Shown: positions 14,511-30,371, counted from the stretch's first letter. The stretch is DNA of 64,000 nt from IMGVR_UViG_3300032242_003291:62001-126000; one strand, 5' to 3'. Notes: generated by a model not told the origin, from the sequence alone. Made by a program: numbers and translations.

Positions 14511-15722
14511 ATGTCAAAAATCAATGTACTAGTAGTTCCTTCCGACAGAACAGGTGTTGGTAAATTTAGGTCTGTAGACCCTCACATCTTCCTTCAATCA
14601 TTATATCCTGATGATTTTCATGTGGATATTATTTATGATTTCTCATATGACGATTTAGAGTTTTTCAAAAAATATCAAATAGTTTCTTTCCACAGAAGTA
14701 TTGGTCCTGATTTTGAAAGAGCACACGATTTAATTATAAAATTAAATAATCTTGGTATTGCCACTGTCGGAGATATCGATGATTATTGGATGCCAGGTAA
14801 AGAACACCCAATTCACGACATCATCAGATTTAACAAAATCAATGAGAAAATTATCGCAAACCTAAAGGTTACGAAATACGTTACAACAACTACGTCATTA
14901 TTTGCTGATGAAATAATGAAAATGAATAAAAATGTTGTTGTATTTCCTAACGCAATTAATCCAAAAGAATCTCAATTTAGAGAGCCGACTCCTGAATCTG
15001 ATAGATTAAGAATTGGATGGTTAGGTGGTTCGTCTCATCTTCACGACTTAGAATTGTTAGACCAATCTTTTAGTAAATTAACATCATATAGTGATAAACT
15101 ACAATATGTTTTATGTGGATTCGATACAAGAGGAACTGTTACTGAAATTAATCAACAAACAGGAGAACATACAAAAAGAAACATTACACCTCAAGAAACT
15201 GTTTGGGCTCAATATGAAAGTATTTTTACTCAGAAATATTCAACGATATCTGAAGACTACAAAAAATATTTACAAAAATATATTCAAGAACCATATCCAA
15301 ATGAGAATAATGAGGCATATTCAAGAGTATGGACAAAACCAGTTCAATCTTATGCTAAGAATTATTCTAAATTTGATGTATCTTTAGCACCAATCAAAAA
15401 TCATATGTTTAATAGAATGAAGTCTCAATTAAAAGTAATTGAAGCAGGTTTCTATAAAAAAGCACTAATCGCATCAAATGTTGGTCCATATACCATAGAT
15501 TTAAAACATTGTTTACAAAATGGTAATTTTGTTGATGGTAATGCGTTATTAGTCGATGAAAATAGAAATCATAGTGATTGGGCTAAATTCATCGAAAAGT
15601 TAATCAAAAACCCAAATATGGTTACTGATATGGGTGAAAGATTATATGAAACAGTCAAAGACACATATGACTTAAATGTTGTAACGAAAGCAAGAGCAGA
15701 ATTTTATAAATCAATTGTATGA
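14511..15722 (+). CDS. GT4-like (GT-B fold) glycosyltransferase
   Basis: DIDDYW, RIGWLGGSSH, FDVSLAP, KSQLKVIEAG, ALIASNVGPY. Confidence 0.8.
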   Translation: MSKINVLVVPSDRTGVGKFRSVDPHIFLQSLYPDDFHVDIIYDFSYDDLEFFKKYQIVSFHRSIGPDFERAHDLIIKLNNLGIATVGDIDDYWMPGKEHPIHDIIRFNKINEKIIANLKVTKYVTTTTSLFADEIMKMNKNVVVFPNAINPKESQFREPTPESDRLRIGWLGGSSHLHDLELLDQSFSKLTSYSDKLQYVLCGFDTRGTVTEINQQTGEHTKRNITPQETVWAQYESIFTQKYSTISEDYKKYLQKYIQEPYPNENNEAYSRVWTKPVQSYAKNYSKFDVSLAPIKNHMFNRMKSQLKVIEAGFYKKALIASNVGPYTIDLKHCLQNGNFVDGNALLVDENRNHSDWAKFIEKLIKNPNMVTDMGERLYETVKDTYDLNVVTKARAEFYKSIV

Positions 15723-16420
15723 TAAATGTACCATTAACAAAAATTTTATTCTTAGATATCGAAACAGTTGGTTGCGAATCCAATTGGGAAAATTTTAAGA
15801 AAAATAAAAAGGAACTTTCATTCCAATTTGAACATATCCAAGATAACCTCAGGAAACGATTTCCTGAGGAATCTGAAACTCCTATTGACCAATTATTTGT
15901 GAATAGGGCGGCATTAGTTCCTGAATTCTTAAAGATAGTTTGTGTTAGCGTTGCATTTGTTATGGATGATGGTAGTGTTAAATTACAATCATTTCATAGT
16001 GAAGATGAAGGAAAATTACTTCAAGACGTACAAAAATTATTGAATCGTACAGGAGACTTAGGTTTTTTCTTGTGCGGACACAATGTTAAAGGATTTGATA
16101 TTCCAACACTAGCGAAACGTATGATGATGTACGGATTAGAACCACCTAAGTTGTTACCAAGTTATGATACTAAACCTTGGGAGGTTAAGGCCATTGATAC
16201 TAAAGATATATGGCAATATGGTGGGTATGGTCAGTTCGCATCTCTTGAACTAATGTGTGTGTGTATGGGTGTTGAATCATCTAAGAATACAGAGGTTACT
16301 GGTAATCGAGTTCATGAAGCGTACTGGGTTGATAAAAATATTGAAGGTATTGTAAAGTACTGTGAGAAAGATGTTATAGTTCTAATTGACATAATAAAAA
16401 AATTAAAAAAACTAAAATAA
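15719..16420 (+). CDS. DEDD 3'-5' exonuclease (PolB-exo-related)
   Basis: LFLDIET, CGHNVKGFDIP, YCEKDV. Confidence 0.8.
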   Translation: MINVPLTKILFLDIETVGCESNWENFKKNKKELSFQFEHIQDNLRKRFPEESETPIDQLFVNRAALVPEFLKIVCVSVAFVMDDGSVKLQSFHSEDEGKLLQDVQKLLNRTGDLGFFLCGHNVKGFDIPTLAKRMMMYGLEPPKLLPSYDTKPWEVKAIDTKDIWQYGGYGQFASLELMCVCMGVESSKNTEVTGNRVHEAYWVDKNIEGIVKYCEKDVIVLIDIIKKLKKLK

Positions 16421-17046
16421 TGCTCCAATTAAATAATGTGAAAGATTCCGAACTATGGAATCAAATACAAGAACAATTTGAAAAATTAAAGAAAGATGCT
16501 GGTATTGAACCAGATGCTGATTACCAAAAAGAACTCGAAGAACTTTTGGGTATATCTGAAGATGAGCTTCGAGAAATGGATGGTCAAACTAAAACTATGT
16601 TATCAACAAAAAAAATTCAAGTAGAATCTATAAATGAGTTAGCAGTACTTCCAAAGTACGCATATCCAACCGATTCAGGATTTGATTTACATTCTGTCGT
16701 AGATTACACATTACCTCCATTAGGAAGAGCAATAATTCCAACAGGAATAAAAGTATCTTTCAGTGAGGGAATTGAATTACAAATTAGACCTAAAAGTGGA
16801 TTAGCAATCAACCAAGGGATTACCGTATTGAATACACCAGGAACTGTCGATGCTGGTTACACAGGTGAAATTAAGGTAATTGTATTTAACTCAAACAATT
16901 ATGATTACACCATAACAAAAGGAATGAAAATTGCACAAGGTGTTTTTGCACCTGTCTTCAATGGTAGAGTCATAAGTTTTGAAATGGTAGATAAGGTTGA
17001 AAATAAAGATAGAGGTGAAAATGGATTTGGTAGTACAGGAATTTAA
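16420..17046 (+). CDS. dut: Trimeric dUTPase with N-terminal extension
   Basis: SGFDL, RPKSGLA, GTVDAGYTGEI, IAQGV, RGENGFGSTG motifs I-V. Confidence 0.93.
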   Translation: MLQLNNVKDSELWNQIQEQFEKLKKDAGIEPDADYQKELEELLGISEDELREMDGQTKTMLSTKKIQVESINELAVLPKYAYPTDSGFDLHSVVDYTLPPLGRAIIPTGIKVSFSEGIELQIRPKSGLAINQGITVLNTPGTVDAGYTGEIKVIVFNSNNYDYTITKGMKIAQGVFAPVFNGRVISFEMVDKVENKDRGENGFGSTGI

Positions 17047-17058
17047 AAAATTAAAATA

Positions 17059-18687
17059 ATGTTAACAGTAGCATACTCAACAAGAGAATCGAAACCTGAA
17101 TTTATAGAATACTTGAAAAAAAGTTCAGGACAAAAAAAAATAGAAGTAATTGAAAAAGTGAACAAGGGAGATAAGTCTCTTGCACAGGTATATAATGAAG
17201 TTTTGTCTGAAGCGACGACTGACATAATTGTTTTTTGTCATGACGACATTTATTTTGATACAAATGGTTGGTACCATAAATTAATCAAACATTTTGAAAA
17301 ATCTGATTACGGTATTATTGGAATGGCGGGAACTACTTCTATGCCTGCAAGTGGTAAATGGTGGGAAGATAGAAAAAAAATGATAGGTATTGTTAACCAT
17401 GAACACGAAGGAAAAAAGTGGGAGTCAAAGTATTCAGAATCATTAAATAACTCAATTGAACAAACAGTCATTGTCGATGGTCTCTTTATTGCTGTAGACA
17501 GAAAAAAACTTAAAAAGAACTTCAATGAGGACTTCAAAGGGTTTCACTTCTACGATATACCATTTTGTTTTGAAAACCATTTAGAAGGTGTTAAAATAGG
17601 TGTAATTACAAATATTAGACTGACACATAAATCTATTGGACAAACTAATGAGCAATGGGAAATTAATAGGCAATTATTTGAAGAAAAATATAAAGATAGT
17701 CTTCCATTTAAATTACCAATTAATCCAAACAAAAGACTCAAGATTTTAATCTCTTGTTTATTCTTTAGAACATTTACAGGCTCTGAATTATATGTTTATG
17801 AATTAGCCAAAAATTTAATTAATATGAATTGTGATGTTACCATCGTATCTCAAATAGGTGGACCATTAACAGACATGGCAAAAAGATTAGGTATAAAATG
17901 TTTAAGCTTTGAACAATCACCAGGGTTCAAACTTGGAGATGGTGTGTGGGGATTTAATACACCTGAAGGATTCAAGGCTTCGACTGAAAATGTAATGTAT
18001 AGAGTTTCTGAAGTTAATTTCGATTTAATTCATATTCAACATAAACCTGTTGCAGAAAGAATGATTCAATTTTATCCTGAAATAGATAAAATCTACTCAA
18101 TACATTCTGAAGTGATTGAATTAGAAGACCCAATTAAACATGAGTCAATTAAAAAATACATAGCAATAAGACCAGAAATTAAAGATTATATGATTAATGA
18201 ATTTCAAATACCTGAAGAAGATATTGAAATCATATACAATCCTGTTGATAACGAAAAATTCAAACCAAGAAAAGTTAATGAACAAAATGCTCTTTTGTTT
18301 GTTGGTACAATCGATTATTTAAGAAGAGAAACAATTTTAGATTTAATTGATTATACAAAAGAAAATGGTAAAGAATTATGGTTAATGGGTGAAGATAAAC
18401 AAAATTATTTACCTTCATTACTTACACAACCACATATAAAACATTTTAAGTCATCTTGGAATGTTGAAAAACTAATGAATGAGTGTAATGAAACAGCAGG
18501 AATTCAATTAGGTAGAACAACAATTGAAAGTTGGTTATCAGGAAAACCAAGTTGGATTTATAAAGTAGATTCCACAGGATTAATTCAATCGAAAGAAAAA
18601 TTTGACCCTCCAACAGATGTTGAAAAATATTACGCTGAAAATGTTACCAAACAAATCAAAGAACAATATTTCAAAATCCTTTCATGA
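17059..18687 (+). CDS. Bifunctional glycosyltransferase: GT2-like (GT-A) fused to GT4-like (GT-B)
   Basis: VFCHDD, IVDGLFIA, FHFYD in the N-half; FTGSELYVYELA, IYNPVD, GRTTIES in the C-half. Confidence 0.72.
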   Translation: MLTVAYSTRESKPEFIEYLKKSSGQKKIEVIEKVNKGDKSLAQVYNEVLSEATTDIIVFCHDDIYFDTNGWYHKLIKHFEKSDYGIIGMAGTTSMPASGKWWEDRKKMIGIVNHEHEGKKWESKYSESLNNSIEQTVIVDGLFIAVDRKKLKKNFNEDFKGFHFYDIPFCFENHLEGVKIGVITNIRLTHKSIGQTNEQWEINRQLFEEKYKDSLPFKLPINPNKRLKILISCLFFRTFTGSELYVYELAKNLINMNCDVTIVSQIGGPLTDMAKRLGIKCLSFEQSPGFKLGDGVWGFNTPEGFKASTENVMYRVSEVNFDLIHIQHKPVAERMIQFYPEIDKIYSIHSEVIELEDPIKHESIKKYIAIRPEIKDYMINEFQIPEEDIEIIYNPVDNEKFKPRKVNEQNALLFVGTIDYLRRETILDLIDYTKENGKELWLMGEDKQNYLPSLLTQPHIKHFKSSWNVEKLMNECNETAGIQLGRTTIESWLSGKPSWIYKVDSTGLIQSKEKFDPPTDVEKYYAENVTKQIKEQYFKILS

Positions 18688-19394
18688 TTATTTTAACAAC
18701 AACATATAATTGTGCTCAATACGTGGAAAGATGTTTGTTGAGTATAATGTCTCAAAGATTCAAAGACTTTACTTGTTATATTACTGATGATTTATCAACA
18801 GACAATACAAGAGAAGTAGTCAAAAAGACTATTGAAGGTGACCCAAGATTTATTTTAATCGAAAATCACATAAAACTTTACCAACCTGGAAATTACGACC
18901 AAATTATTAATTGGAGAGGAATTCCTGGTGAAGAAATTTGTGTTGAAGTTGATGGTGATGATTGGTTACCTAATCCAAGTGTGTTCGATATAATTAACGA
19001 TACATATAAAGATGAAAACGTTTGGATGACAAGTGGTTCATTTAAGTATCATGATGGTAGACAAGGATTTGCAAATCCACCAACAAAATTTACAGATGTA
19101 AGAAAACAAACATTCACATTATCTCATTTGAGAACATGGAAATCGTGGTTATGGAAAAAAATTAAAGAAGAAGATTTGAAAGATGAAAATGGAAATTATT
19201 GGGACGTTGCAGGAGATTTATCATTCATGTTCCCGATGTTTGAAATGTCAGGTGAAGAACATTATAGATTCTTACCAAACATAAATTATATTTATAATGA
19301 ATCTAATCCAATCAATGACCACAAGGTTAATATGAGTAATGTAATTCAAACGGTTAATAAGATTAGAAATAAACAACCATATAAAAAAATTTAA
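18684..19394 (+). CDS. GT2 family glycosyltransferase
   Basis: ILTTTYN, ITDDLSTD, VEVDGDDWL, HLRTW. Confidence 0.78.
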   Translation: MIILTTTYNCAQYVERCLLSIMSQRFKDFTCYITDDLSTDNTREVVKKTIEGDPRFILIENHIKLYQPGNYDQIINWRGIPGEEICVEVDGDDWLPNPSVFDIINDTYKDENVWMTSGSFKYHDGRQGFANPPTKFTDVRKQTFTLSHLRTWKSWLWKKIKEEDLKDENGNYWDVAGDLSFMFPMFEMSGEEHYRFLPNINYIYNESNPINDHKVNMSNVIQTVNKIRNKQPYKKI

Positions 19395-20003
19395 ATGCAT
19401 ACAGAACATAATGATAGATGGAATAAAGATAATGGTAACTTCCATCTAGTTGCTAATTACCCATTAACAGAAGATTCTTGGGTTATCGAATTAGGAGGAT
19501 ATAAAGGAGAGTGGACTAATAGAATAGCATCGAACTACAAATCCAACATACTTGTTGTCGAACCAATAAAAGAATTTTGTCAATATATAATTGATTCACA
19601 AGGAACAAATCCAAAAGTAATTATTGAGAATAACGGTATTTCAACTGTAGAAAGAGTCACTCAATTATCTTTTAACGGAGACGCCTCTTCTGAATATCTT
19701 GAACAAACAAATGAAAAAAGAGATGTTACTTGTTATACTTTAGATTATTATATGTCAAAATATAACATTGATAAAGTAGATTTAATGCAAGTCAACATTG
19801 AAGGAGAAGAATATCCTTTATTTGAGCAGTGGATTAATTCTGATATTTTAAAAAAGTTTCAATACATTCAAATACAATTTCATAGAGTTGGTGACAATTA
19901 TGAAGAAAGAAGACAAAATATTCATAGAGGAATGGAAAATTTAGGGTTTGAGTTAAGATGGGATTACGATTATGTTTTTGAGTCTTGGAAAAATAAGAAT
20001 TAG
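19395..20003 (+). CDS. FkbM-family SAM-dependent methyltransferase
   Basis: VIELGGYKG, VVEP, LMQVNIEGEEY, QIQFH. Confidence 0.75.
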   Translation: MHTEHNDRWNKDNGNFHLVANYPLTEDSWVIELGGYKGEWTNRIASNYKSNILVVEPIKEFCQYIIDSQGTNPKVIIENNGISTVERVTQLSFNGDASSEYLEQTNEKRDVTCYTLDYYMSKYNIDKVDLMQVNIEGEEYPLFEQWINSDILKKFQYIQIQFHRVGDNYEERRQNIHRGMENLGFELRWDYDYVFESWKNKN

Positions 20004-20049: not shown

Positions 20050-20877
20050 ATGAAAAACTTAATATCATGTAATCTAATGGGTGGGCTTGGTAATCAATTA
20101 TTTGAAGCGGCTCATGCATTAGCACAAGGTTGGAAACATAATAGAGAAACTGTGTTCCTTCCACATTCTTGGACACCAGGTCAAGGGAGAGGTGCCGAAA
20201 ATTACGTCAATAATGTATTCAGAAATCTAAAGTTTGTTGACCAAATTGAATCCGCAACAACAGTAAACGAAGGTTCATTTGAATATTCAGAAGTTAATCC
20301 AGTTGAAGAAAATACCTCATTTCACGGATATTTTCAATCAACAAAAAACTGGTTCGGATATGAAGATAAAATAAGAGAAATTTTTCAGGCGCCAGTAGAA
20401 CTTGTGGAAGAGTTTATGGGAAAATATCCCCAACTATCCCAACCTAATACGTTATCACTTCACGTTCGAAGAAGTGAGTATCTTCAGTTCCCTGAAATAC
20501 ACCCTACAATTAGCATAGAATACATTAAAGAGGCTTTAAAAGTTATTGGTGAGTATTCTACTGTTTTTGTTTTTAGTGACGACCATGACTTTGTAAAAGA
20601 TAATCTTAATTTTCCTTCAGTTATTTTTGTTAATGAACCTGAAGATTATAGAGAATTATGGTTAATGGGTTTATGTCAAAACCACATCATATCAAACTCT
20701 ACCTTCTCATGGTGGGGAGTTTTCCTAAACAAAAAATTAAATAAAAAAATAGTTGCACCATCAACTTGGTTTGGACCGAGAGGACCTCAATCAAAAGACA
20801 TCTATGAAGACTATTGGATAACAATACCTACAGAATGGACTGAAGGTGGAATTATAAAACCTACAAACAATGGATAA
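20050..20877 (+). CDS. GT11 alpha-1,2-fucosyltransferase family
   Basis: GGLGNQLF, GYFQS, SLHVRRSEY, FVFSDD, HIISNSTFSWW. Confidence 0.88.
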   Translation: MKNLISCNLMGGLGNQLFEAAHALAQGWKHNRETVFLPHSWTPGQGRGAENYVNNVFRNLKFVDQIESATTVNEGSFEYSEVNPVEENTSFHGYFQSTKNWFGYEDKIREIFQAPVELVEEFMGKYPQLSQPNTLSLHVRRSEYLQFPEIHPTISIEYIKEALKVIGEYSTVFVFSDDHDFVKDNLNFPSVIFVNEPEDYRELWLMGLCQNHIISNSTFSWWGVFLNKKLNKKIVAPSTWFGPRGPQSKDIYEDYWITIPTEWTEGGIIKPTNNG

Positions 20878-21703
20878 AGTAAAAATTAGAAAAGTATCTG
20901 ATTGGTGGGGTGAGTACGATTGCTCATCTAACCGCAACATGCCAAAGTACATTCAATGGCTACCAATAGAAACTCAAGACCCTTACGATGTGAGTGTTTA
21001 TGTTGATAATTACATCAAGGATTGGGGGTTCAATGACCCATCGAGAGAAAAGATTGCTTGGTTATTGGAGTCACCACAAATTAATGAAGGTGTCATCAAA
21101 TATCTTATAGATAATATTGATTTGACAAGAGAACATTTCAAATGGATTTTCACTTGTGTTGATAGTTTATTAGAATTAGGTCCCCCGTTTGTTTACAATA
21201 TTTCTAATGCCGCTCCTTGGATTTGGGAGAAAAATAGAATGATTCACCCCAAAACTAAGTTAGTGTCGATGATTGCATCAAGCAAAGGATGGTTACGTGG
21301 ACATCAGAATAGATTAGAATGGGTTGATAAATTAAAAGATAAAGTTGACTTATTCGGTTCAGGGAGACCTAACCAATTAAACGATAAAGAAGATGGATTG
21401 AAAGATTATATGTTTTCGGTTGCAATTGAAAACGATAACTCAGACACTTACTTCACAGAGAAATTAACTGACTGTTTCGCTATGGGTACAGTACCTGTTT
21501 ATTACGGCTCAAGAAAAGTTATTGAAAAATACTTTGACCCAGCAGGTGTTATTTTTTTAGAAGATGACCCCAAATTAGAAACATTAACGGCAGAAAAATA
21601 TCAATCAATGATGCCAGCAATAGAAAGAAATTTAATTGCGGCAAATAACCTACCTGTATCTGAAGATTATATGTGGGAAAATTATTTAAAAAATTTATTT
21701 TAA
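20870..21703 (+). CDS. GT10 alpha-1,3/4-fucosyltransferase-like
   Basis: SMIASSK, YMFSVAIEN, YFTEKLTDCF..GTVPVYYG. Confidence 0.78.
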   Translation: MDKVKIRKVSDWWGEYDCSSNRNMPKYIQWLPIETQDPYDVSVYVDNYIKDWGFNDPSREKIAWLLESPQINEGVIKYLIDNIDLTREHFKWIFTCVDSLLELGPPFVYNISNAAPWIWEKNRMIHPKTKLVSMIASSKGWLRGHQNRLEWVDKLKDKVDLFGSGRPNQLNDKEDGLKDYMFSVAIENDNSDTYFTEKLTDCFAMGTVPVYYGSRKVIEKYFDPAGVIFLEDDPKLETLTAEKYQSMMPAIERNLIAANNLPVSEDYMWENYLKNLF

Positions 21704-24422: not shown

Positions 24423-25376
24423 ATGAAAGTAATCGCAACAACTACAATCAATCCGCCAACCGACGCTTTGATGAAATACATTAAAATGAAAGATTGGTCT
24501 ATCATAATTGCTGGCGATTTGAAAACTCCACACGAAGATTATTTGAAACTAGAAAAAGAATATTCAAATGTAACTTATTTTTCGCCCGAAGACCAGTTTA
24601 AAAAATACAAACAACTAAGTGAATTAATTGGGTGGAATTGTATTGAGAGACGTAATATGGCAATATTAGAAGCATTGGTTAGAGGTGCAGATGTTGTCGC
24701 ACTTATTGATGACGATAATATTCCTTATGAAGATTGGGGTAAGGATTTATGCGTAGATATTGAAACATCAGTAACAAAATACAATATTGATGATATTGCA
24801 TTTGACCCCATAGGAGCAACCATAGAACATAAAAATCTATGGCATAGAGGGTTTCCATTAGAACGTATTTCTCATAGGGACTACTCAAATAAAGAATCCA
24901 CCACGATAATACCAAAAGTACAAGCTATTTTTTGGAACGGCGACCCAGATGTTGATGCAGTTTGTAGAATGATTTATAATCCAAATTGTAACTTTAGTCC
25001 CAATCAATTTCCAATATCGTCAAATAAAATGGCACCATTCAATTCTCAAAATACTATTTTGAGTAAAGATGTTATTTCTGATTATTTTTTATTTCCACAA
25101 ACAGAAAGAATGCAAGACATATGGGCGGCATATTATTTACAAGCCAAAGGTCATAATGTAATCTTCACAAAGCCAGGTGTTTATAGTGATAGAACTTTGG
25201 GTACTTCTGGTAGATATTCAATTATTAATGATATGAAAAAAGAGTATCTTGGTATGGAAAATAATTTACAATTAATCCGAGATATAACTGAAAACCCTGA
25301 TAACATAAAAAAATATATAAGTGAAAGGTCTTGGAATGCTTTTCAAGAATGGAAAAAAATTATAAACAATTTATAA
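24423..25376 (+). CDS. STELLO/DUF288-like (GT75-related) putative glycosyltransferase
   Basis: IATTTIN, AGDLKTP, RRN, LIDDDN, DPDVDA, PFNSQNT, RMQDIW. Confidence 0.68.
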   Translation: MKVIATTTINPPTDALMKYIKMKDWSIIIAGDLKTPHEDYLKLEKEYSNVTYFSPEDQFKKYKQLSELIGWNCIERRNMAILEALVRGADVVALIDDDNIPYEDWGKDLCVDIETSVTKYNIDDIAFDPIGATIEHKNLWHRGFPLERISHRDYSNKESTTIIPKVQAIFWNGDPDVDAVCRMIYNPNCNFSPNQFPISSNKMAPFNSQNTILSKDVISDYFLFPQTERMQDIWAAYYLQAKGHNVIFTKPGVYSDRTLGTSGRYSIINDMKKEYLGMENNLQLIRDITENPDNIKKYISERSWNAFQEWKKIINNL

Positions 25377-25396: not shown

Positions 25397-26488
25397 ATGA
25401 AAAAAATAGTAGTACTTGGTGGTGGTGGATTTATTGGTGGTCACTTAGCCAAAAGATTAAAAGATGAAGGTAATCACGTAAGAATATGTGATATTAAAAA
25501 ACACGAATATTTCTTTCAAGACGAAATATGTCATGAATTTATCCAAGCAGATTTAACAGACCCAAAAGTTGTTGAGCTAGTTATTGAAGAAGGTGTTGAT
25601 GAAGTTTACCAATTGGCTGCAGATATGGGTGGAGCACTTTACATTTTTACTGGAGAACATGATGCAGATGTGATGCATAATTCAGCAACCATTAATCTTA
25701 ATGTTGCAAAAGAATGTGTTAAGAAAAAAGTGGGTAAAGTATTTTATTCGTCTTCAGCATGTATGTATCCTGAACACAATCAGTTAGACCCCAACAACCC
25801 AAATTGTGAAGAATCATCCGCATACCCCGCTAATCCAGATTCAGAATATGGGTGGGAGAAATTATTCTCGGAAAGAGTATATCTATCCTTTCACAGAAAC
25901 TATAATTTAAATGTTAGAATAGCAAGATTCCACAATATCTTTGGACCACAAGGTACTTGGAAAGGTGGTAGAGAAAAATCACCAGCAGCAATGTGTAGAA
26001 AGGCAGCAGAATCTAAAGACGGAGATGTTATTGAGGTGTGGGGTAACGGATTACAAACTCGTTCATTCTTATACGTTGATGAATGTGTTGAAGCCGTTCT
26101 AAAGCTAATGAAGTCAGATTTTACAGGTCCTGTAAACATTGGTAGTGAAGAAATGGTCACAATTAATCAATTGGCTAGCATGGCTATTGCAATTTCAGAA
26201 AAAGATATCAAAATAAAGAATATTGAAGGAGATGAATTTGTTCAAAAGTATGGATTCAAATGTCCATTAGGCGTTAAAGGTAGAAATTCTGATAATAAAC
26301 TATATAGAGATAAGATTGGGTGGGAAGTTAGTCAACCTCTTTCTATTGGTCTAAAAAAGACTTACAATTGGATAAAATCACAAGTAGATAGTATTGAAAA
26401 AGAAACTCCTTGGATTTATGAAAGCCCCGATGGAAAAACGGTTTATAAAAGAGAACCAGGAAGTACAGAAAGGATACAAATTAAATAA
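25397..26488 (+). CDS. GDP-mannose 3,5-epimerase-like
   Basis: GGGGFIGGHL, QLAADMGG, FYSSSACMYP, SEYGWEKLFSE, GGREKSPAA.CRK, GVKGRNSDN. Confidence 0.85.
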   Translation: MKKIVVLGGGGFIGGHLAKRLKDEGNHVRICDIKKHEYFFQDEICHEFIQADLTDPKVVELVIEEGVDEVYQLAADMGGALYIFTGEHDADVMHNSATINLNVAKECVKKKVGKVFYSSSACMYPEHNQLDPNNPNCEESSAYPANPDSEYGWEKLFSERVYLSFHRNYNLNVRIARFHNIFGPQGTWKGGREKSPAAMCRKAAESKDGDVIEVWGNGLQTRSFLYVDECVEAVLKLMKSDFTGPVNIGSEEMVTINQLASMAIAISEKDIKIKNIEGDEFVQKYGFKCPLGVKGRNSDNKLYRDKIGWEVSQPLSIGLKKTYNWIKSQVDSIEKETPWIYESPDGKTVYKREPGSTERIQIK

Positions 26489-26494: not shown

Positions 26495-26875
26495 ATGATA
26501 TCAATACCTGTTAGTATCGGAGAAATGATTGATAAGTTATCAATACTCCAAGTAAAAAAGACAAAAATAAATGACAATAATAAATTAGAATTAGTCAATA
26601 AAGAGTTTGAGTTATTGTATAATTTCTCTTTAGAGTATCTGAATGATACTGAAATAGAAATCATTTACCATCAACTTGTCGAAGTTAACTCTAGTCTTTG
26701 GGATATCGAAGATAAGTTAAGAGTAATGGAATCCCAACAAAAATTTGATGATGAATTTGTTAAACTAGCTAGAAATGTCTATTTTACGAATGATGAAAGA
26801 TTCAGATTGAAAAACGAAATCAACTCAATCTCTAACTCAGAAATTAAAGAAGTTAAAGATTACGTGAAATACTAA
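26495..26875 (+). CDS. Conserved hypothetical protein often linked to glycosylation loci (DUF6165-like)
   Basis: IPVSIGEMIDKLSILQVK, VNSSLWDIED, LARNVY..NDERF.LK. Confidence 0.6.
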   Translation: MISIPVSIGEMIDKLSILQVKKTKINDNNKLELVNKEFELLYNFSLEYLNDTEIEIIYHQLVEVNSSLWDIEDKLRVMESQQKFDDEFVKLARNVYFTNDERFRLKNEINSISNSEIKEVKDYVKY

Positions 26876-26892
26876 ACCACAAAAAAAATTTA

Positions 26893-27630
26893 ATGGGTAA
26901 ACAAACAAGAAGAAGTAGTCCGACACCAACTCCAAACGATGAGTGGGTAAGTCCAAAAACAAAAAAACAAATAATTTGTTCACTTGTAAAGAAGAAAACT
27001 AAAGAAAAATTTTTATCAGAAAGTCAAAGAGATTATTACAATTTATTATCAAAAAACCAAATAACAATTTGCTCAGGTCCTGCTGGTGTGGGTAAAAGTT
27101 ATATTGCAATGAAATGTGCAGTTGATTTATTGGTAGACCCTGACACACCTTATGAAAAAATTATTATTGTAAGGCCAGCGGTCGAAGCTGAAGAAAAACT
27201 TGGAAGTCTTCCTGGGGGTGTTGAAGAAAAATTAGACCCATACATTTTCCCATCTTATTATCTTTTGAATAAAATTATCGGAAAGGATGTTAGGGAAAAA
27301 TTAAAAGATGCTGAAGCTATTGAAGTGTTTGCACTAGCATATATGAGGGGTATGAATATTGATAATTCAATATTAATATTTGAAGAGGCTCAGAATTCAA
27401 CTCCAAGTCAAATGAAACTTTTATTAACAAGAATTGGATTTAATTCTAAGTTTTTTATTTCGGGTGATTTGGAACAATTTGATAGACATAAAGATAAAAC
27501 ACAGACAGGTCTTTGGGATTCATTACAAAAGTTTCAGAACATGGACGATGTTGGTGTTTTTGAATTTAAACCTGAAGATATTGTTAGAAATCCTTTGATT
27601 TCAAAAATATTAAAAAGATATGAAGAATGA
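26893..27630 (+). CDS. phoH: PhoH-family ATPase
   Basis: GPAGVGKS, IVRPAVE, LGSLPG, YMRG, EEAQN, LTRIG, GDLEQ.D, VRNPL. Confidence 0.92.
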   Translation: MGKQTRRSSPTPTPNDEWVSPKTKKQIICSLVKKKTKEKFLSESQRDYYNLLSKNQITICSGPAGVGKSYIAMKCAVDLLVDPDTPYEKIIIVRPAVEAEEKLGSLPGGVEEKLDPYIFPSYYLLNKIIGKDVREKLKDAEAIEVFALAYMRGMNIDNSILIFEEAQNSTPSQMKLLLTRIGFNSKFFISGDLEQFDRHKDKTQTGLWDSLQKFQNMDDVGVFEFKPEDIVRNPLISKILKRYEE

Positions 27631-28238
27631 AAATAGGGATTGAAATAAATGGGGTGTTAAGAGATACGTTAAAGAAAGTCCAACAAGAGTATGAGAAATG
27701 GTACCTAAATGAAAATCTTAAAGAACTTAAATTAATTGAAAACGACCCTGAAGTTGAAAGAAAAATAATTTCCGATGTAACATCTTTAGAATTATCAAAA
27801 CACTTGTCGTTCAAAAATAATGACGAAGTCTACGATTTTTTATATAAGGAACACACAATGGAAATATTTGGTCATGCTGGTTCGGTAGAATATAGTAGTA
27901 TGAATGATTTGAATGACTTCTACTTTGAGACTAGAGATAACCATGACATTTTAATTGTTTCTGATGAAATAGGAAAATCAAAACCAGCGTCTTTATTTTT
28001 CTTAGCTAAGTTTGGATGTTTGATAGAAACTATAAAATTTTATAGCGAAATTACAATAAATTCGATGTGGGACTCAGTAGACGTTTTACTTACAGCAAAT
28101 CCTAATCTATTATTAACACACCCAACAAATAAATTAGTTATTAAATTTAATACTGAATATAATTCACATATTGAATCTGAACATTCGATATCAAGTATTA
28201 AAGAACTAACAAACAAAATAAAAGAAATTTATGATTAG
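27627..28238 (+). CDS. HAD/5'(3')-nucleotidase-like protein with degenerate motif I
   Basis: MKIGIEINGVLRD replaces the usual IGIDIDGVL. Confidence 0.5.
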   Translation: MKIGIEINGVLRDTLKKVQQEYEKWYLNENLKELKLIENDPEVERKIISDVTSLELSKHLSFKNNDEVYDFLYKEHTMEIFGHAGSVEYSSMNDLNDFYFETRDNHDILIVSDEIGKSKPASLFFLAKFGCLIETIKFYSEITINSMWDSVDVLLTANPNLLLTHPTNKLVIKFNTEYNSHIESEHSISSIKELTNKIKEIYD

Positions 28239-28509
28239 TGTTTTAGGAGAAAATTATTACATCGACTTAGATGTAATTGAAAAATATTTGGATATGAGTG
28301 ATTCTGAGCCAATTGAACCTGTGTCAGGTTCTACTGAAATGAGAATCAACATCATAAAATTTGAAATGGTAAAAATGTTACTTGAAACTGTTCTTAGTGA
28401 ATCTTTCGGTGAAGATGAAAAATTAGGAATGAAAAATTCGGCAACATCAATACCATTCAGGATAGCATTTAACAGTTTATTAAATAAAAAATTAATCAAT
28501 CACTACTAA
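28231..28509 (+). CDS. Hypothetical phage protein
   Basis: 92-aa ORF in the operon. Confidence 0.6.
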   Translation: MISVLGENYYIDLDVIEKYLDMSDSEPIEPVSGSTEMRINIIKFEMVKMLLETVLSESFGEDEKLGMKNSATSIPFRIAFNSLLNKKLINHY

Positions 28510-28510
28510 T

Positions 28511-29563
28511 ATGGAAAATTCATTAAAAGACAAAGTATTAAAGTCCATCGAGATATTAAAAGACAAACAAGCTAGATTATATTTCTTAGTTCAAGACACT
28601 AAGGGAAATGCAAAAGCTTCTGTTAGATTTATATATCAAGTGGCAAAAACATTAAAGGAAAATGGTTTCAATCCCATTCTACTACACGAAAAGAAAGACT
28701 ATGCAGGGGTTGCCGCATGGTTAGATGAGGAATATATGAAATTACCTCACAGAGTAATCGAAGGTCAAAATTTAGAAATTTCACCAGAAGATTTTTTAAT
28801 TATCCCTGAGATTTTTGCGTTTATGATGGACCAAGTGAAACAACTACCTTGTGCAAAAATTGTGTTAGCACAATCTTATGCATATATTGTTGAAACTTTA
28901 CAACCAGGTCAAAACTGGGCACAATATGGTTTTTTTAAATGTATCACAACAACAAACAATCAAAAAGAATATATTGAAAAGGTAATGAGACAATCAAGTT
29001 TTGATATAATTAAACCGTATATAACTGAAAGTTTTTACCCTAAATCGGTACCCCCGATGCCAATTATTGGTGTTCACACAAAAGAGCAAAGCGATGCTGT
29101 TAACATTATCAAAACATTTTATTTGAAATTTCCACAATATAGATGGTTCACTTTCAGAGATTTGAGAGGTCTCTCAGAAAGGGAATTTTCAAATTCACTA
29201 AGAGACTGTTTTGTAAGTGTTTGGATTGATGATGAAAGTGGATTTGGTACTTTTCCGTTAGAATCTATGAAATCTAATGTACCTGTAATTGGTAAGATAC
29301 CAAACTTAAAAGCTGAGTGGATGACTGAAGAAAATGGAATTTGGATTACTGACAAAACACTATTTGCTGATGTTATTGCAGACTTTATACAAAATTGGTT
29401 AGAGGATAATATCAAACCTGAACTTTATGACGAAATGAAGAAAACAGTCGAACCTTATACTAATAAACAAGAATTTGATAATTCTGTTGTTAACTTATTT
29501 AGTAGTTACTTAGAAAACAGAGGAAAATCATTTGAAGAACAATTAAACAAAACCGAAGAATAA
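28511..29563 (+). CDS. GT4-like (GT-B) glycosyltransferase
   Basis: DFLIIPE, FVSVWID..SGFGTFPLESM, VPVIG. Confidence 0.7.
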   Translation: MENSLKDKVLKSIEILKDKQARLYFLVQDTKGNAKASVRFIYQVAKTLKENGFNPILLHEKKDYAGVAAWLDEEYMKLPHRVIEGQNLEISPEDFLIIPEIFAFMMDQVKQLPCAKIVLAQSYAYIVETLQPGQNWAQYGFFKCITTTNNQKEYIEKVMRQSSFDIIKPYITESFYPKSVPPMPIIGVHTKEQSDAVNIIKTFYLKFPQYRWFTFRDLRGLSEREFSNSLRDCFVSVWIDDESGFGTFPLESMKSNVPVIGKIPNLKAEWMTEENGIWITDKTLFADVIADFIQNWLEDNIKPELYDEMKKTVEPYTNKQEFDNSVVNLFSSYLENRGKSFEEQLNKTEE

Positions 29564-29564
29564 C

Positions 29565-30371
29565 ATGGAAAATAAATTATCATTATCAGTTATATTACCA
29601 ATTAAATCATCCAAAGCGAGAAACTTTGATGAATATTTTCAAAAAGCAATAGATTCTTTGAAAAACCAAAAAGTTGAATTTGAAGAATTGGTAATTGTTC
29701 ATACTTTAGAAGAATCATTAATATCATTATTAGAAACATATGATTTTGGTAACTTAACTGTTACAAAAGTTTTATGGGATAAAGAACCAAATTACTGCTC
29801 ACAAGTTAATTTTGGAATTGAAAAGGCAAGAGGTCAGTGGGTTTCCTTGTTTGAATTTGATGATGAATACTCATCAATATGGTTCAAAAATGTTAAAACA
29901 TATATTAATTCATATCCAGAAACACAAATGTTTTTACCTGTAGTTGTTGAGACGGATGAAAAAGGTATGTTTGCTGGTTTTACAAACGAAGCAACATTTG
30001 CAGCTAATTTTACTCAAGAAATGGGTACATTAACAAATGAAACATTACACGACTATCAAAATTTTCAAACTGCTGGTAGTGTAATTAAAAAACAAGTGAT
30101 TGAAGATTTCGGTGGATTCAAACCATCAGTAAAACTGACATTTGTATACGAATTCTTATTAAGACTTACATATAATTCAGTTTCAGTAATGACAATACCA
30201 AAACTTGGATACAAACATACTAATCTAAGAGAAGGTTCAATCTTTTGGAATTATAAGAACGGTGACGTAAAAATGTTAGAAGATGAAGTAAAATTTTGGA
30301 TTCAAACCGCAAAAAAGGAATATTTTTTCACCGACGATAGAGTCATAAAATATCAATCAGAAAATGTATAA
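29565..30371 (+). CDS. GT2-like (GT-A) glycosyltransferase
   Basis: LSVILPI, NFGIEKA, SLFEFDDEY, YEFLLRL, GYKHTN. Confidence 0.7.
   Translation: MENKLSLSVILPIKSSKARNFDEYFQKAIDSLKNQKVEFEELVIVHTLEESLISLLETYDFGNLTVTKVLWDKEPNYCSQVNFGIEKARGQWVSLFEFDDEYSSIWFKNVKTYINSYPETQMFLPVVVETDEKGMFAGFTNEATFAANFTQEMGTLTNETLHDYQNFQTAGSVIKKQVIEDFGGFKPSVKLTFVYEFLLRLTYNSVSVMTIPKLGYKHTNLREGSIFWNYKNGDVKMLEDEVKFWIQTAKKEYFFTDDRVIKYQSENV

What the first reader, a model, noticed from the sequence alone, without database searches (positions are those of the whole stretch)
14511..30371. ~16 kb nucleotide-sugar and fucosylation island; with GT60/GT25 it supplies the enzyme set for an H/Lewis-like glycan
Seen: Gmd, Fcl, GT11, GT10, several GT2/GT4 domains, an FkbM methyltransferase, an SDR epimerase, a GME-like and a STELLO-like gene. 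Established: Gmd+Fcl make GDP-L-Fuc; GT11 adds alpha-1,2-Fuc to Gal; GT10 adds alpha-1,3/4-Fuc to GlcNAc. Inference: with GlcNAc (GT60) and Gal (GT25) this could build a Fuc-Gal-(Fuc-)GlcNAc-O-Thr type core, possibly O-methylated. Alternative targets are host LPS/capsule (receptor masking) or phage DNA, since dUTPase and an exonuclease are interspersed, but no base hydroxymethylase is visible in this window.
Basis: partly seen in the sequence, partly recalled or inferred. Interest (0 to 1): 0.75.

Follow-up and report, generated by a model that had tools for sequence, protein, structure and literature searches.

The report
Swappable sugar-coat gene cassette in jumbo phage
A 317-kb lake phage carries a swappable block of genes that makes three rare L-sugar donors and about nine sugar-adding enzymes, probably to coat its own Thr-Pro-rich tail and head proteins rather than DNA or the host surface.

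Summary
Window 14511-30371 holds Gmd, Fcl, GDP-mannose 3,5-epimerase (GME), GT11, GT10, an FkbM methyltransferase, a fourth SDR and six or seven further glycosyltransferase domains, with an exonuclease, dUTPase and PhoH interspersed.

- The 'STELLO-like' gene is a homologue of MtdL, the GDP-L-galactose pyranose-furanose mutase. It sits directly upstream of GME.
- In this phage clade the conserved module is GME + short SDR + GT10 + GT11. Gmd and Fcl are a rare insert, absent from three complete sister genomes. L-galactose is therefore the ancestral donor, not fucose.
- The region is a hypervariable slot between conserved genes. Relatives carry other sugar cassettes there.

The likeliest target is the phage's own Thr-Pro-linker proteins:
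- A GT60 gene follows such proteins in 37 of 37 related loci.
- In one lineage a GME cassette lies inside the GT60 gene array.
- Xanthomonas phage XacN1 has the same GT60 module, a homologous Thr-Pro protein and stained virion glycoproteins.
- The phage has no lipid-carrier glycan machinery.

The exact glycan, including any Lewis-like structure, and the target itself remain inferred. Similar islands are already annotated in cyanophages.

The parts
11748..11799 (.). 52-bp divergent intergenic region with two copies of the phage upstream motif (G)TATTTAT, one facing each way
   Evidence: Sequence read. One copy lies 16 nt upstream of the TP900 start codon (- strand) and the other 23 nt upstream of the 11800 ORF (+ strand). 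TATTTATA occurs in 52 of 377 upstream regions against about 3 expected.
11800..14455 (+). Five small leader ORFs of the + strand array (276, 158, 99, 141 with a WYL domain, 228 aa); conserved backbone
   Evidence: ORFs. WYL domain at E 2e-4. Homologues are present in related loci.
14511..15722 (+). Probable GT-B glycosyltransferase (403 aa); conserved left flank
   Evidence: Sub-threshold Glyco_trans_1_4 and Glycos_transf_1 hits. 63-85% identical copies in relatives.
15719..16420 (+). PolB-like 3'-5' exonuclease (backbone, not glycan-related)
   Evidence: PF10108 at E 4e-13.
16420..17046 (+). dUTPase (backbone); left border of the variable slot
   Evidence: PF00692 at E 1.4e-26. Synteny.
17059..18687 (+). 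Two-domain glycosyltransferase (GT-A Glyco_tranf_2_5 plus GT-B Glyco_transf_4 N-terminal domain)
   Evidence: PF13712 at 112.8 bits and PF13439 at 41.8 bits.
18684..19394 (+). GT2 glycosyltransferase
   Evidence: PF00535 at E 4.5e-15.
19395..20003 (+). FkbM-family methyltransferase (probable sugar O-methylation)
   Evidence: PF05050 at E 1.8e-11 and TIGR01444 at 42.9 bits, above its cut-off.
20050..20877 (+). GT11 alpha-1,2-L-fucosyl-type transferase
   Evidence: PF01531 at 80 bits. Motifs HVRRSEY and SNSTFSWWG.
20870..21703 (+). GT10 alpha-1,3/4-L-fucosyl-type transferase
   Evidence: PF00852 at 47.5 bits. Motif FSVAIENDNSDTYFTEK aligned to solved fucosyltransferases.
21705..22520 (+). Short extended SDR (271 aa), specificity unknown; travels with GME, GT10 and GT11
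   Evidence: PF01370 at E 1.3e-27. GSAGQIG and YGIAK motifs. 54% identical homologue in cyanophage S-SSM7.
22517..23419 (+). GDP-L-fucose synthase (Fcl/GMER)
   Evidence: Human GFUS 4e5y at E 5e-80, full length, with S-x-C, YxxxK and His conserved. NCBIfam NF047922 gives 232 bits, under its cut-off.
23416..24408 (+). GDP-mannose 4,6-dehydratase (Gmd)
   Evidence: TIGR01472 at 416.7 bits against a cut-off of 415; PF16363 at E 1e-119.
24423..25376 (+).
   Evidence: A family profile hits only MtdL chains in the PDB, at E 1.3e-25. The top six Foldseek hits are MtdL, at E 2.5e-15. DDDN, NSQNT and GRMDDIW are invariant.
25397..26488 (+). GDP-mannose 3,5-epimerase (GME); clade-conserved right border of the variable slot
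   Evidence: 2c59 at E 1e-93, with catalytic Cys, YxxxK and Lys conserved. At least 591 IMG/VR relatives.
26495..26875 (+). DUF6165 protein, function unknown
   Evidence: PF19662 at E 1.3e-9.
26893..27630 (+). PhoH-like ATPase (backbone)
   Evidence: PF02562 at E 1.4e-61.
27627..28509 (+). HAD/NT5C-like protein (203 aa, weak hit) and a 92-aa ORF; conserved backbone
   Evidence: synteny.
28511..29563 (+). GT-B (GT4-like) glycosyltransferase; conserved right flank
   Evidence: Weak PF00534 hit. All named ESM Atlas neighbours belong to the Glycos_transf_1 clan. Present in 52 of 80 loci.
29565..30371 (+). GT2 glycosyltransferase; conserved right flank
   Evidence: PF00535 at 26.2 bits. Present in 52 of 80 loci.
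30371..31153 (+). 260-aa conserved ORF, last gene before the next upstream motif; weak sigma-70-like hit
   Evidence: No Pfam hit. TIGR02937 at 17 bits, below its cut-off. The next motif lies before 31172.
9045..11747 (-). TP900: LamG-like N-terminal region, Thr-Pro linker, C-terminal domain shared with tail-associated proteins; candidate glycan acceptor
   Evidence: Sequence. ESM Atlas neighbours include Laminin_G_3 clusters. The C-terminal domain is also found in XacN1 ORF372, S-SSM7 gene 230 (next to gp9) and a crAssphage putative tail protein.
6178..9043 (-). Three further Thr-Pro-repeat proteins (364, 372 and 184 aa); candidate acceptors
   Evidence: Sequences. Upstream motif before two of them. 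The Thr-Pro stretch is predicted disordered, pLDDT 24-25.
4838..6103 (-). GT60 polypeptide GlcNAc-transferase-like enzyme; probable initiating transferase
   Evidence: PF11397 at E 1e-66. phrog_24687 at E 1.6e-162. 47% identical to XacN1 ORF334.
1552..4838 (-). GT25, a 311-aa ORF and an HtrL_YibB-domain protein (558 aa), co-directional with GT60
   Evidence: PF01755 at 40.7 bits and PF09612 at 68.3 bits. The 311-aa ORF and HtrL have homologues next to GT60 in XacN1.
53976..54425 (-). TP149: an 85-aa Thr-Pro/Ser-Pro N-terminus plus a small C-terminal domain, inside the head/packaging block
   Evidence: Sequence. The portal and terminase genes lie a few genes away in the same - strand block. Upstream motif at -26.

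Best explanation
The region is the variable glycan cassette of a 25-gene co-directional array (window 11800-31153). The array belongs to a 317-kb T4-like jumbo phage from fresh water, whose host is probably a member of the Bacteroidota.

Shown by homology and conserved catalytic residues:
- Three branches start from host GDP-mannose. The phage has no NDP-sugar pyrophosphorylase of its own.
- Gmd plus Fcl give GDP-L-fucose.
- The MtdL-like mutase next to GME should convert the GDP-L-hexopyranose to its furanose form.
- Eight or nine soluble glycosyltransferase domains, including GT10 and GT11, and an FkbM methyltransferase then assemble and methylate a glycan.

Inferred:
- Assembly happens in the cytoplasm, on the phage's own proteins that carry long Thr-Pro mucin-like linkers. 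These are TP900 and three neighbours, TP149 in the head block, and six more elsewhere in the genome.
- The neighbouring GT60 module (GT60, GT25, the 311-aa ORF, HtrL) starts the chains. The conserved flanking transferases build a core.
- The swappable cassette supplies the outer L-Fuc, L-Gal or L-Galf caps.
- Because relatives carry different cassettes at the same slot, virions of the clade would differ in surface glycan, much as bacteria differ in O-antigen.
For: Enzymology:
- Family assignments and catalytic residues.
- Mutase: profile E 1.3e-25 to MtdL only; fold E 2.5e-15; the residues mutated in the MtdL structures (S228, R257) align with invariant Ser and Arg of the phage family.
- The mutase gene is adjacent to GME here. 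Homologues accompany GME in 12 of 45 clade loci and lie within about 6 kb of GME in cyanophages S-T4, Sf-CH5 and Sf-CH8.
- No PF00483 (NDP-sugar pyrophosphorylase) anywhere in the genome.

One transcription unit:
- The largest gap between genes is 55 nt. There is no convincing terminator and no internal copy of the upstream motif.

Variable slot:
- Relatives carry TylF, DegT, acyltransferase and other genes between the same flanks.
- Gmd and Fcl occur in 1 of 45 clade loci and are absent from three complete sister genomes.

Protein target:
- All transferases lack transmembrane segments, and no ORF in the genome has more than five.
- No Bac_transf-type or WecA-type initiating transferase.
- GT60 is preceded by Thr-Pro ORFs in 37 of 37 loci.
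- In record G006, a Thr-Pro/LamG protein, GT60, GT25, GT61, a Fringe-like gene, GME and HtrL form one array.
- XacN1 has the GT60 module, a Thr-Pro protein with a domain homologous to TP900, and Schiff-stained virion glycoproteins (PMC5852040).
- The TP900 C-terminal domain recurs in tail or baseplate contexts.
- The same upstream motif precedes the portal gene, the gene just upstream of the major head protein gene, the Thr-Pro genes and the array.
Against: - No direct evidence shows that any protein of this phage is glycosylated or is in the virion.
- The link between the island and the GT60/Thr-Pro module rests on adjacency, plus one lineage in which the two are fused.
- GT25, HtrL, GT2 and GT4 are families typical of LPS and capsule synthesis. 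Soluble transferases can act on host undecaprenyl-linked intermediates.
- dUTPase, an exonuclease and PhoH in the same array suggest an early or middle metabolic region rather than a late structural one.
- The upstream motif precedes 100 of 377 genes, so it does not by itself mark late genes.
- Equivalent islands in cyanophages are read in the literature as host cell-wall genes (PMC9602691).
- The complex prediction of GT60 with a Thr-Pro peptide gave no answer.
- Metatranscriptome contigs gave nothing usable.
Confidence: 0.45

Rival explanations
1. Host-envelope remodelling. The soluble phage transferases and GDP-sugar enzymes feed into the host's own lipid-linked LPS, capsule or general O-glycosylation pathway during infection. 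This would change the cell surface, for example to block superinfection or grazing. It is the usual reading of such islands in cyanophages.
For: - Families typical of LPS and capsule loci are present: GT25, HtrL_YibB, GT2, GT4, and WcbI in a relative.
- Homologous GME, GT10, GT11 and Gmd/Fcl islands in cyanomyoviruses are annotated as cell-wall genes (PMC9602691).
- Hypervariability is also expected for a trait that acts on surface receptors.
Against: - The phage has no initiating phosphoglycosyltransferase, flippase, polymerase or ligase.
- GT60 is a polypeptide-modifying family. It is tightly and universally linked to Thr-Pro proteins that lack signal peptides.
- XacN1, which carries the same module, has virion glycoproteins.
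Confidence: 0.3
2. The glycan is built on another acceptor: a non-structural phage or host cytoplasmic protein, a free or secreted oligosaccharide, or a small molecule. MtdL and a GME homologue act in the biosynthesis of the nucleoside antibiotic A201A.
For: - The only characterised relatives of the GME plus mutase pair act in a natural-product pathway (PMC6678494).
- Many transferase domains have no assignable acceptor.
Against: - There are no polyketide, nonribosomal-peptide or nucleoside-scaffold genes in the array.
- The Thr-Pro acceptor candidates are conserved next to GT60.
Confidence: 0.15
3. Glycosylation of phage DNA bases as protection against restriction.
For: - dUTPase and an exonuclease lie within the array.
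- Phage glycosyltransferases are known to hypermodify DNA (cited in PMC12619734).
Against: - The genome's only thymidylate-synthase-family protein matches canonical thymidylate synthases, best at E 4e-73. No dCMP or dUMP hydroxymethylase appears among the 60 best PDB matches listed.
- To my knowledge, GT10, GT11 and GT60 are not known to act on DNA.
- dUTPase and the exonuclease are conserved backbone genes, outside the variable cassette.
Confidence: 0.03

Closest known systems
Glycan ('LPS/cell-wall') gene islands of T4-like cyanophages, e.g. S-SCSM1 and S-SSM7
   Same: - S-SCSM1 is reported to encode Gmd, Fcl, GME, an alpha-1,2-fucosyltransferase and several other transferases side by side (PMC9602691).
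- S-SSM7 has homologues of GME (58% identity), the short SDR (54%) and GT10 (42%), plus three GT11 homologues.
- 37 isolated-phage records carry a GME homologue and 103 carry a GT11 homologue.
- Like this phage, they have a gp23-type major head protein.
   Different: - There the genes are interpreted as host cell-wall genes, and no acceptor has been proposed.
- Here the island sits beside a GT60 module and Thr-Pro-linker proteins.
- It carries an MtdL-like mutase, which only S-T4, Sf-CH5 and Sf-CH8 share among isolates.
- It is shown here to occupy a defined hypervariable slot in a freshwater jumbo-phage clade.
A201A sugar pathway of Marinactinospora thermotolerans (a GME activity plus the mutase MtdL)
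   Same: [quoted passage not shown] The phage pair is homologous to both enzymes and the two genes are adjacent.
   Different: - About 20% identity to MtdL.
- The context is a phage glycan cassette, not an antibiotic cluster.
- The substrate could be GDP-L-fucose as well, since Gmd and Fcl lie just upstream.
Virion glycosylation by virus-encoded enzymes (mycobacteriophages Che8, Corndog and Myrna; chlorovirus PBCV-1; Xanthomonas phage XacN1)
   Same: - Virus-encoded soluble transferases act in the cytoplasm on structural proteins.
- PBCV-1 also encodes Gmd and a GDP-fucose synthase and methylates its glycan (my own knowledge).
- XacN1 shares homologues of GT60, the 311-aa ORF and HtrL, and has stained virion glycoproteins.
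   Different: - The acceptors here would be long Thr-Pro linkers. In mycobacteriophages they are C-terminal tails of the capsid and tail-tube proteins; in PBCV-1 they are Asn residues.
- No experiment exists for this clade.
- The donor set (L-Gal, L-Galf) and the cassette swapping are not described for any of these systems.
Mucin-type O-GlcNAc initiation by GT60 enzymes of Trypanosoma cruzi and Dictyostelium
   Same: The Pfam GlcNAc family PF11397 matches at E 1e-66. The candidate acceptors are Thr- and Pro-rich repeats, as in the mucins and spore-coat proteins that those enzymes modify (my own knowledge).
   Different: - The phage enzyme has no membrane anchor.
- Its activity and acceptor are untested.
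Lewis and H antigen synthesis on Helicobacter pylori LPS (GT10 FutA/B, GT11 FutC)
   Same: GT10 and GT11 members with the family motifs are present, together with a GT25 galactosyltransferase-family gene.
   Different: - The H. pylori glycan is built on lipid-linked O-antigen.
- Here the GT10/GT11 pair is linked evolutionarily to GME rather than to the fucose pathway.
- Nothing shows a LacNAc acceptor.

Membership tests
GDP-mannose 4,6-dehydratase (Gmd, TIGR01472) | Whole-protein score at or above the curated equivalog cut-off | tested here: met
   416.7 bits against a cut-off of 415. PF16363 at E 1e-119 over the full profile.
GDP-L-fucose synthase (Fcl/GMER) | Score at or above the NCBIfam equivalog cut-off (NF047922, 500 bits) | tested here: not met
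   231.7 bits. It is still by far the best family, but too divergent from the bacterial model.
GDP-L-fucose synthase (Fcl/GMER) | Full-length similarity to solved enzymes, with the S-x-C, YxxxK and catalytic His motifs | tested here: met
   4e5y at E 5e-80 over residues 2-300. LSTCIFP, YGYAKRM and GHVVP align with the human enzyme.
GDP-mannose 3,5-epimerase (GME) | Full-length similarity to the characterised plant enzyme, with catalytic Cys, Tyr-x3-Lys and Lys | tested here: met
   2c59 at E 1e-93 over residues 3-332. SSACMYPE, EYGWEKL and GGREKSPAA align with the Arabidopsis motifs.
MtdL-type GDP-L-hexose pyranose-furanose mutase (GT75-like) | Sequence and fold homology to MtdL | tested here: met
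   The profile of 13 family members hits only MtdL chains, at E 1.3e-25. Foldseek E 2.5e-15, TM-score 0.66/0.58. Rice UDP-arabinopyranose mutase is next, at 1.5e-6.
MtdL-type GDP-L-hexose pyranose-furanose mutase (GT75-like) | Metal-binding DxD motif, plus the Ser and Arg probed by mutation in the MtdL structures (S228A, R257K) | tested here: met
   DDDN, NSQNT (Ser208) and GRMDDIW (Arg229) are invariant in 13 sequences. They align with the MtdL motifs DDDN, NSQNT and ERFGDIF. The residue mapping is by my count of the printed alignment.
MtdL-type GDP-L-hexose pyranose-furanose mutase (GT75-like) | Mutase activity on GDP-L-galactose or GDP-L-fucose | not testable with these tools
   Only gene context is available: adjacent to GME here, with homologues accompanying GME in relatives.
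GT11 alpha-1,2-fucosyltransferases | Pfam score above the gathering cut-off, plus the HxRRxxY and SNSTFSWW motifs | tested here: met
   PF01531 at 80 bits against a cut-off of 23.9. HVRRSEY and SNSTFSWWG are seen.
GT11 and GT10 fucosyltransferases | Donor is GDP-L-fucose, with a Gal or GlcNAc acceptor in a defined linkage | not testable with these tools
   Co-inheritance with GME rather than with Gmd/Fcl makes GDP-L-galactose an equally plausible donor.
GT10 alpha-1,3/4-fucosyltransferases | C-terminal catalytic domain with the FxxAxENxxxxxYxTEK motif | tested here: met
   PF00852 at 47.5 bits against a cut-off of 23.9. The motif aligns to a solved glycoprotein 3-alpha-L-fucosyltransferase (9s6a). 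H. pylori FucT and human FUT9 are also matched.
GT60 polypeptide alpha-GlcNAc transferases | Pfam PF11397 score above the cut-off | tested here: met
   226.3 bits against a cut-off of 21. Transfer to Thr in Thr-Pro repeats is not testable here.
Virus-encoded virion glycosylation systems | Glycan covalently bound to virion proteins | not testable with these tools
   Indirect only: XacN1, which carries the homologous module, has Schiff-stained virion bands.
Virus-encoded virion glycosylation systems | Soluble virus-encoded transferases plus structural proteins with a recognisable acceptor region | tested here: met
   No transmembrane segments in any transferase. 11 ORFs carry two or more TPTP motifs. 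Thr-Pro ORFs precede GT60 in 37 of 37 loci. The structural role of these proteins is inferred from domain homology.
Lipid-linked (Wzx/Wzy or ABC) O-antigen or capsule assembly loci | Initiating phosphoglycosyltransferase, flippase, polymerase or ligase | tested here: not met
   No PF02397 or PF00953 match. No ORF has more than five hydrophobic segments. Use of the host's machinery cannot be excluded.
Phage DNA base glycosylation systems | Enzyme that makes a hydroxymethylated pyrimidine | tested here: not met
   One PF00303 protein in the genome, at 324 bits. Its best PDB matches are canonical thymidylate synthases.

The most novel reading that the evidence does not exclude
A widespread freshwater jumbo-phage clade runs its own mucin-type O-glycosylation system, independent of the host's. 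GT60 starts chains on the Thr-Pro linkers of tail and head appendages. A cassette exchanged between phages like an O-antigen locus caps the chains with methylated L-fucose, L-galactose and the very rare L-galactofuranose. The result would be virion 'glycotypes'.
Probability: 0.3. Interest if true: 0.85.

Novelty: new variant of a known kind. Interest (0 to 1): 0.6.

Why it matters
Sugar islands have been annotated in large aquatic phages for about twenty years and are usually called host cell-wall genes, to my knowledge without a test.

This window offers a concrete, testable alternative. It has acceptor candidates (Thr-Pro-linker proteins), an initiating enzyme (GT60) and a defined swappable slot. 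A culturable proxy, XacN1, has the same module and stained virion glycoproteins.

It also places a GME plus MtdL-like mutase pair in phages. That implies L-galactofuranose or L-fucofuranose, sugars hardly known in nature, in an abundant lake virus group. IMG/VR holds at least 591 contigs with a GME relative and 344 with a GT60 relative.

If virions carry variable glycan coats, that would bear on phage adsorption, aggregation, grazing, antibody or lectin recognition, and on how 'auxiliary metabolic genes' are counted.

Tried and rejected
- Megablast of the island against isolated phages: no match.
- PHROGs on the Thr-Pro proteins: only unknown-function families, probably driven by the repeats.
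- Sigma-70 promoter scan: fewer hits than in shuffled sequence, so uninformative. The terminator scan found only weak sites inside coding sequence.
- T4 late-promoter consensus TATAAATA: 18 matches against 10.5 expected, but in the wrong orientation. This led to the real enriched motif, TATTTAT(A) on the sense strand.
- Donor lineage of Gmd: the best bacterial homologues are 48-56% identical and spread over many phyla, so no donor or host signal.
- Fcl relatives in IMG/VR: 27 loci, at most 51% identical. No near copy of the insert was listed, although the tool may leave out records of this genome or ones very near it.
- Sequencing runs: the exact island is found only in DNA metagenomes.
- Lake metatranscriptome contigs laid on 20489-26488 gave short pieces, nearly all under 90% identical and mostly on Gmd. 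Transcription was not shown.
- Complex prediction of GT60 + Mn + a 71-aa Thr-Pro segment: 'no answer'.
- AlphaFold model of the TP900 C-terminal domain: pLDDT 48, too poor for a fold search.
- The 'moraphage' paper (PMC12619734) describes aquatic jumbo phages of Bacteroidota with four core glycosyltransferase groups. I could not establish whether this clade belongs to them.
- The specificity of the short SDR could not be resolved from PDB or NCBIfam matches.

Full report
**Setting.** The window is bases 62001-126000 of a 317,259-bp IMG/VR virus record that CheckV rates 100% complete. GC content is 33%. The record has a T4 gp23-type major head protein at 40282-42093, a portal gene at 46585-48465 and a large terminase gene at 48503-50260. 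The nearest isolated relatives by head protein are a Microcystis phage, Flavobacterium 'immuto' phages and uncultured huge phages, at 42-44% identity. A Bacteroidota-like -7 promoter word, TAnnTTTG, is enriched upstream of genes: TATCTTTG occurs 16 times against 2.2 expected. Reading that word as Bacteroidota-like rests on my own knowledge. A Bacteroidota host is therefore plausible but not shown.

From 11800 to 31153 there are 25 + strand ORFs with overlapping or nearly abutting ends; the largest gap is 55 nt. Within 14511-30371 the searches confirm the following.
- Gmd scores 416.7 bits on TIGR01472, above the curated cut-off of 415.
- Fcl aligns full length to human GDP-L-fucose synthase at E 5e-80, with the S-x-C, YxxxK and His motifs. 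It is below the NCBIfam equivalog cut-off.
- GME matches Arabidopsis 2c59 at E 1e-93, with catalytic Cys, Tyr/Lys and Lys conserved.
- GT11 and GT10 score above Pfam cut-offs and carry their family motifs.
- Also confirmed: an FkbM methyltransferase, a 271-aa SDR with an intact Rossmann motif and YxxxK, two GT2 proteins, and a two-domain Glyco_tranf_2_5/Glyco_transf_4 protein.
- Two GT-B-like proteins have only sub-threshold Pfam hits. One of them is backed by ESM Atlas neighbours.

All four SDR genes of the genome lie in the island, and so do three of its six GT2 matches. A PolB-like exonuclease, dUTPase, DUF6165, PhoH and a HAD-like protein are interspersed.

**The 'STELLO-like' gene is a mutase.** The ORF at 24423-25376 has no Pfam or NCBIfam hit. 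ESM Atlas places it among viral clusters in which some members carry the STELLO or RGP family.
- A profile built from 13 clade homologues matches only one set of PDB proteins: the MtdL chains, at E 1.3e-25 over 230 positions.
- An AlphaFold model (pLDDT 72, pTM 0.77) has MtdL as its six best Foldseek matches, at E 2.5e-15 and TM-score 0.66/0.58. Rice UDP-arabinopyranose mutase follows.
- PDB entry titles describe MtdL as a metal-dependent, arginine-mediated pyranose-furanose mutase, with structures soaked in GDP-fucopyranose.
- Identifying MtdL as the GDP-L-galactose mutase of the A201A pathway is my own recollection of Zhu et al., PNAS 2017. That paper could not be read. Its title names a GDP-L-galactose mutase, and PMC6678494 and PMC7700177 cite it.
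- According to PMC6678494, a GDP-mannose 3,5-epimerase activity in that pathway supplies the L-galactose, which ends up in furanose form.
- The residues mutated in the MtdL structures (S228A, R257K) align, by my count of the printed alignment, with invariant Ser208 (NSQNT) and Arg229 (GRMDDIW) of the phage family. A DDDN motif is also invariant.

The gene lies directly upstream of GME. Homologues accompany GME in 12 of 45 informative clade loci. They also lie within about 6 kb of GME in cyanophages S-T4, Sf-CH5 and Sf-CH8.

The island therefore encodes three branches from GDP-mannose: GDP-L-fucose, GDP-L-galactose, and a GDP-L-hexofuranose. The phage has no NDP-sugar pyrophosphorylase, so GDP-mannose must come from the host.

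**Comparative anatomy changes the emphasis.** IMG/VR holds at least 591 contigs with a GME relative and 344 with a GT60 relative. Several are complete genomes of 317-326 kb, so this is a large clade. Labels on the sequencing runs that hold near-identical sequence point to lakes and an estuary.

Gene-order maps of 80 loci show a conserved backbone on both sides of a slot whose content varies.
- Left side: the small ORFs, a GT-B gene, the exonuclease and dUTPase.
- Right side: GME, sometimes DUF6165, PhoH, the HAD-like gene, the 92-aa ORF, a GT-B gene, a GT2 gene, the 260-aa ORF and onward.

Other slot contents include a TylF O-methyltransferase with a galactosyltransferase-like gene (L021). Another version has SAM methyltransferases, FkbM, an acyltransferase, a DegT aminotransferase and a Zn-dehydrogenase (L004).

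Among 45 clade loci with at least 8 kb upstream of GME:
- 26 have GT11, 14 have GT10 and 12 have the short SDR. All 12 with the SDR carry GT11, GT10 and the SDR together.
- Only one has Gmd and Fcl.
- None has the combination seen in this window.

Three complete sister genomes have GT11, GT10, the SDR and GME but no Gmd or Fcl anywhere. Cyanophage S-SSM7 has the same four-gene set without Gmd or Fcl nearby. The closest viral Fcl found is only about 50% identical.

So the conserved module is GME-centred, and Gmd and Fcl are a rare insert. GDP-L-galactose is at least as likely as GDP-fucose to be the donor for the GT10 and GT11 enzymes. That some fucosyltransferases accept GDP-L-galactose is my own knowledge from plant mur1 mutants; it was not tested here.

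**What the glycan is put on.** Immediately upstream, on the other strand, lie four proteins with long (Thr-Pro)n linkers of 900, 184, 372 and 364 aa. They are followed on the same strand by GT60 (PF11397, E 1e-66), GT25, a 311-aa ORF and an HtrL_YibB protein.
- Genome-wide, 11 of 526 ORFs have two or more TPTP motifs. One is a 149-aa protein in the head/packaging block.
- None of the proteins whose sequences I read has an evident signal peptide.
- A 71-aa Thr-Pro stretch of the 364-aa protein is predicted disordered.
- In all 37 related loci with enough upstream sequence, GT60 is preceded on the same strand by at least one Thr-Pro ORF. The length and number of these ORFs vary.
- In record G006, one co-directional array runs from a Thr-Pro/LamG protein through GT60, GT25, the 311-aa homologue, GT61, a Fringe-like gene, GME and WcbI to HtrL. 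There the GME cassette sits inside the GT60 gene set.
- GT60 homologues occur in only four isolated-phage records: Xanthomonas phages XacN1 and Xoo-sp13, and Stenotrophomonas phages CM1 and RAS14.
- XacN1 also has the 311-aa and HtrL homologues next to its GT60. Its ORF372 has Thr-Pro linkers flanking a domain 36% identical to the C-terminal domain of TP900.
- The XacN1 authors saw at least two Schiff-stained glycoproteins in virions (PMC5852040).
- The TP900 C-terminal domain also occurs in S-SSM7 gene 230, next to the gp9 baseplate gene, and in a crAssphage 'putative tail protein'. The N-terminal part of TP900 resembles LamG/ConA-like viral proteins.

**What argues against a lipid-linked pathway or DNA.**
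- No transferase in the region has a hydrophobic segment, and no ORF in the genome has more than five.
- There is no Bac_transf-type or WecA-type initiating transferase.
- The single thymidylate-synthase-family protein resembles canonical ThyA.

None of this excludes soluble phage transferases acting on host lipid-linked intermediates. That is the standard reading of the cyanophage islands (PMC9602691).

**Expression hints.** A sense-strand word, TATTTAT(A), lies 11-36 nt upstream of many start codons, most often at 11-12 or 21-23 nt. TATTTATA is present in 52 of 377 upstream regions against about 3 expected. It precedes the portal gene, the gene just upstream of the major head protein gene, TP149, TP364, TP372 and TP900.
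- Two divergent copies occupy the 52-bp gap between TP900 and the first + strand gene at 11800.
- No further copy occurs until 31172. This makes the array the longest motif-free run I saw on the genome map.
- No convincing terminator lies inside it.
- GT60 has its own TAnnTTTG word, preceded by a hairpin with a T-run.

This fits co-regulation of the array with morphogenesis genes. It is weak evidence, because the motif precedes about a quarter of all genes and the array also holds nucleotide-metabolism genes.

**Verdict.** The gene content is confirmed and better defined. The Lewis-like structure is unsupported speculation.

The most likely function is cytoplasmic O-glycosylation of Thr-Pro-linker virion proteins with a clade-variable outer glycan. 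My confidence in this is about 0.45. Host-envelope remodelling is the main rival, at about 0.3.

Comparable islands are already annotated in cyanophages. New here are:
- the defined variable slot;
- the pairing of GME with an MtdL-like mutase;
- the link to GT60 and the Thr-Pro proteins.

Noticed in passing
whole genome; window examples 11777-11783 (+), 48494-48501, 54444-54451: A sense-strand word, TATTTAT(A), lies upstream of 100 of 377 genes, most often starting 11-12 or 21-23 nt before the ATG. It looks like a phage-specific -10-type promoter. The closer class would give leaderless or near-leaderless mRNAs. It is close to the reverse complement of the T4 late consensus TATAAATA (which is TATTTATA).
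   Followed up: partly
whole genome; e.g. window 6103 upstream (-44), 37902 upstream (-24): TAnnTTTG (TATCTTTG 16 times against 2.2 expected) is enriched upstream of genes, mostly in the 200-300 kb part of the genome. It resembles the Bacteroidota -7 promoter element, which hints at a Bacteroidota host and an early gene class.
   Followed up: partly
window 30371-31153: A conserved 260-aa ORF at the end of the array has a weak, sub-threshold match to sigma-70/ECF factors (17 bits). It could be a phage sigma factor. This is a lead only.
   Followed up: no
window 40282-42093: The major head protein is 603 aa. Homologues align in two pieces covering only about 55% of it, so it seems to carry a large Ser/Thr/Asn/Gly-rich insertion (roughly residues 110-340).
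   Followed up: no
window 6125-6165 (- strand): A GC-rich hairpin followed by a T-run lies between the 364-aa Thr-Pro gene and GT60. This suggests that the Thr-Pro genes and the GT60 set are separate transcription units.
   Followed up: no
window 56445-58457: A 670-aa ATP-dependent (Lon-like) protease gene (phrog_4871, E 2e-242) on the + strand, between - strand genes just past the head/packaging block.
   Followed up: no
G000 155483-156544 (locus L176 1483-2544): The thymidylate synthase is 353 aa, against about 264-320 aa in solved enzymes, and aligns to them in two or three pieces. It appears to carry an insertion.
   Followed up: no
G000 221.6 kb and 231-232.5 kb (loci L166, L167, L171, L175): Three more GT2-type matches lie outside the window, so the phage has further glycosyltransferases beyond the two modules described.
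   Followed up: no
GenBank cyanophage records, e.g. S-SSM7 200671-201726, S-B05, S-T4, S-CAM9: Homologues 53-58% identical to this GME are annotated as 'UDP-glucose 4-epimerase' or 'nucleotide-sugar epimerase'. They are probably GDP-mannose 3,5-epimerases.
   Followed up: partly
L052 2452-8696 (record G006): In another lineage the cassette contains a GT61 gene, a Fringe-like GT31 gene, a PRK/uridine-kinase-domain protein and a class II aldolase. These transferase families are best known from eukaryotic protein O-glycan extension.
   Followed up: partly
XacN1 203370-213311 (ORF325) and 258445-261711 (ORF372): Two very large XacN1 proteins carry Thr-Pro-type linkers. ORF325 lies next to baseplate wedge genes and near the GT9 and GT60 genes. 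Both are candidates for the unidentified Schiff-positive virion bands.
   Followed up: partly
window 13402-13827: A WYL-domain protein (E 2e-4) lies among the small leader ORFs of the array. WYL domains are usually ligand-sensing regulators.
   Followed up: no
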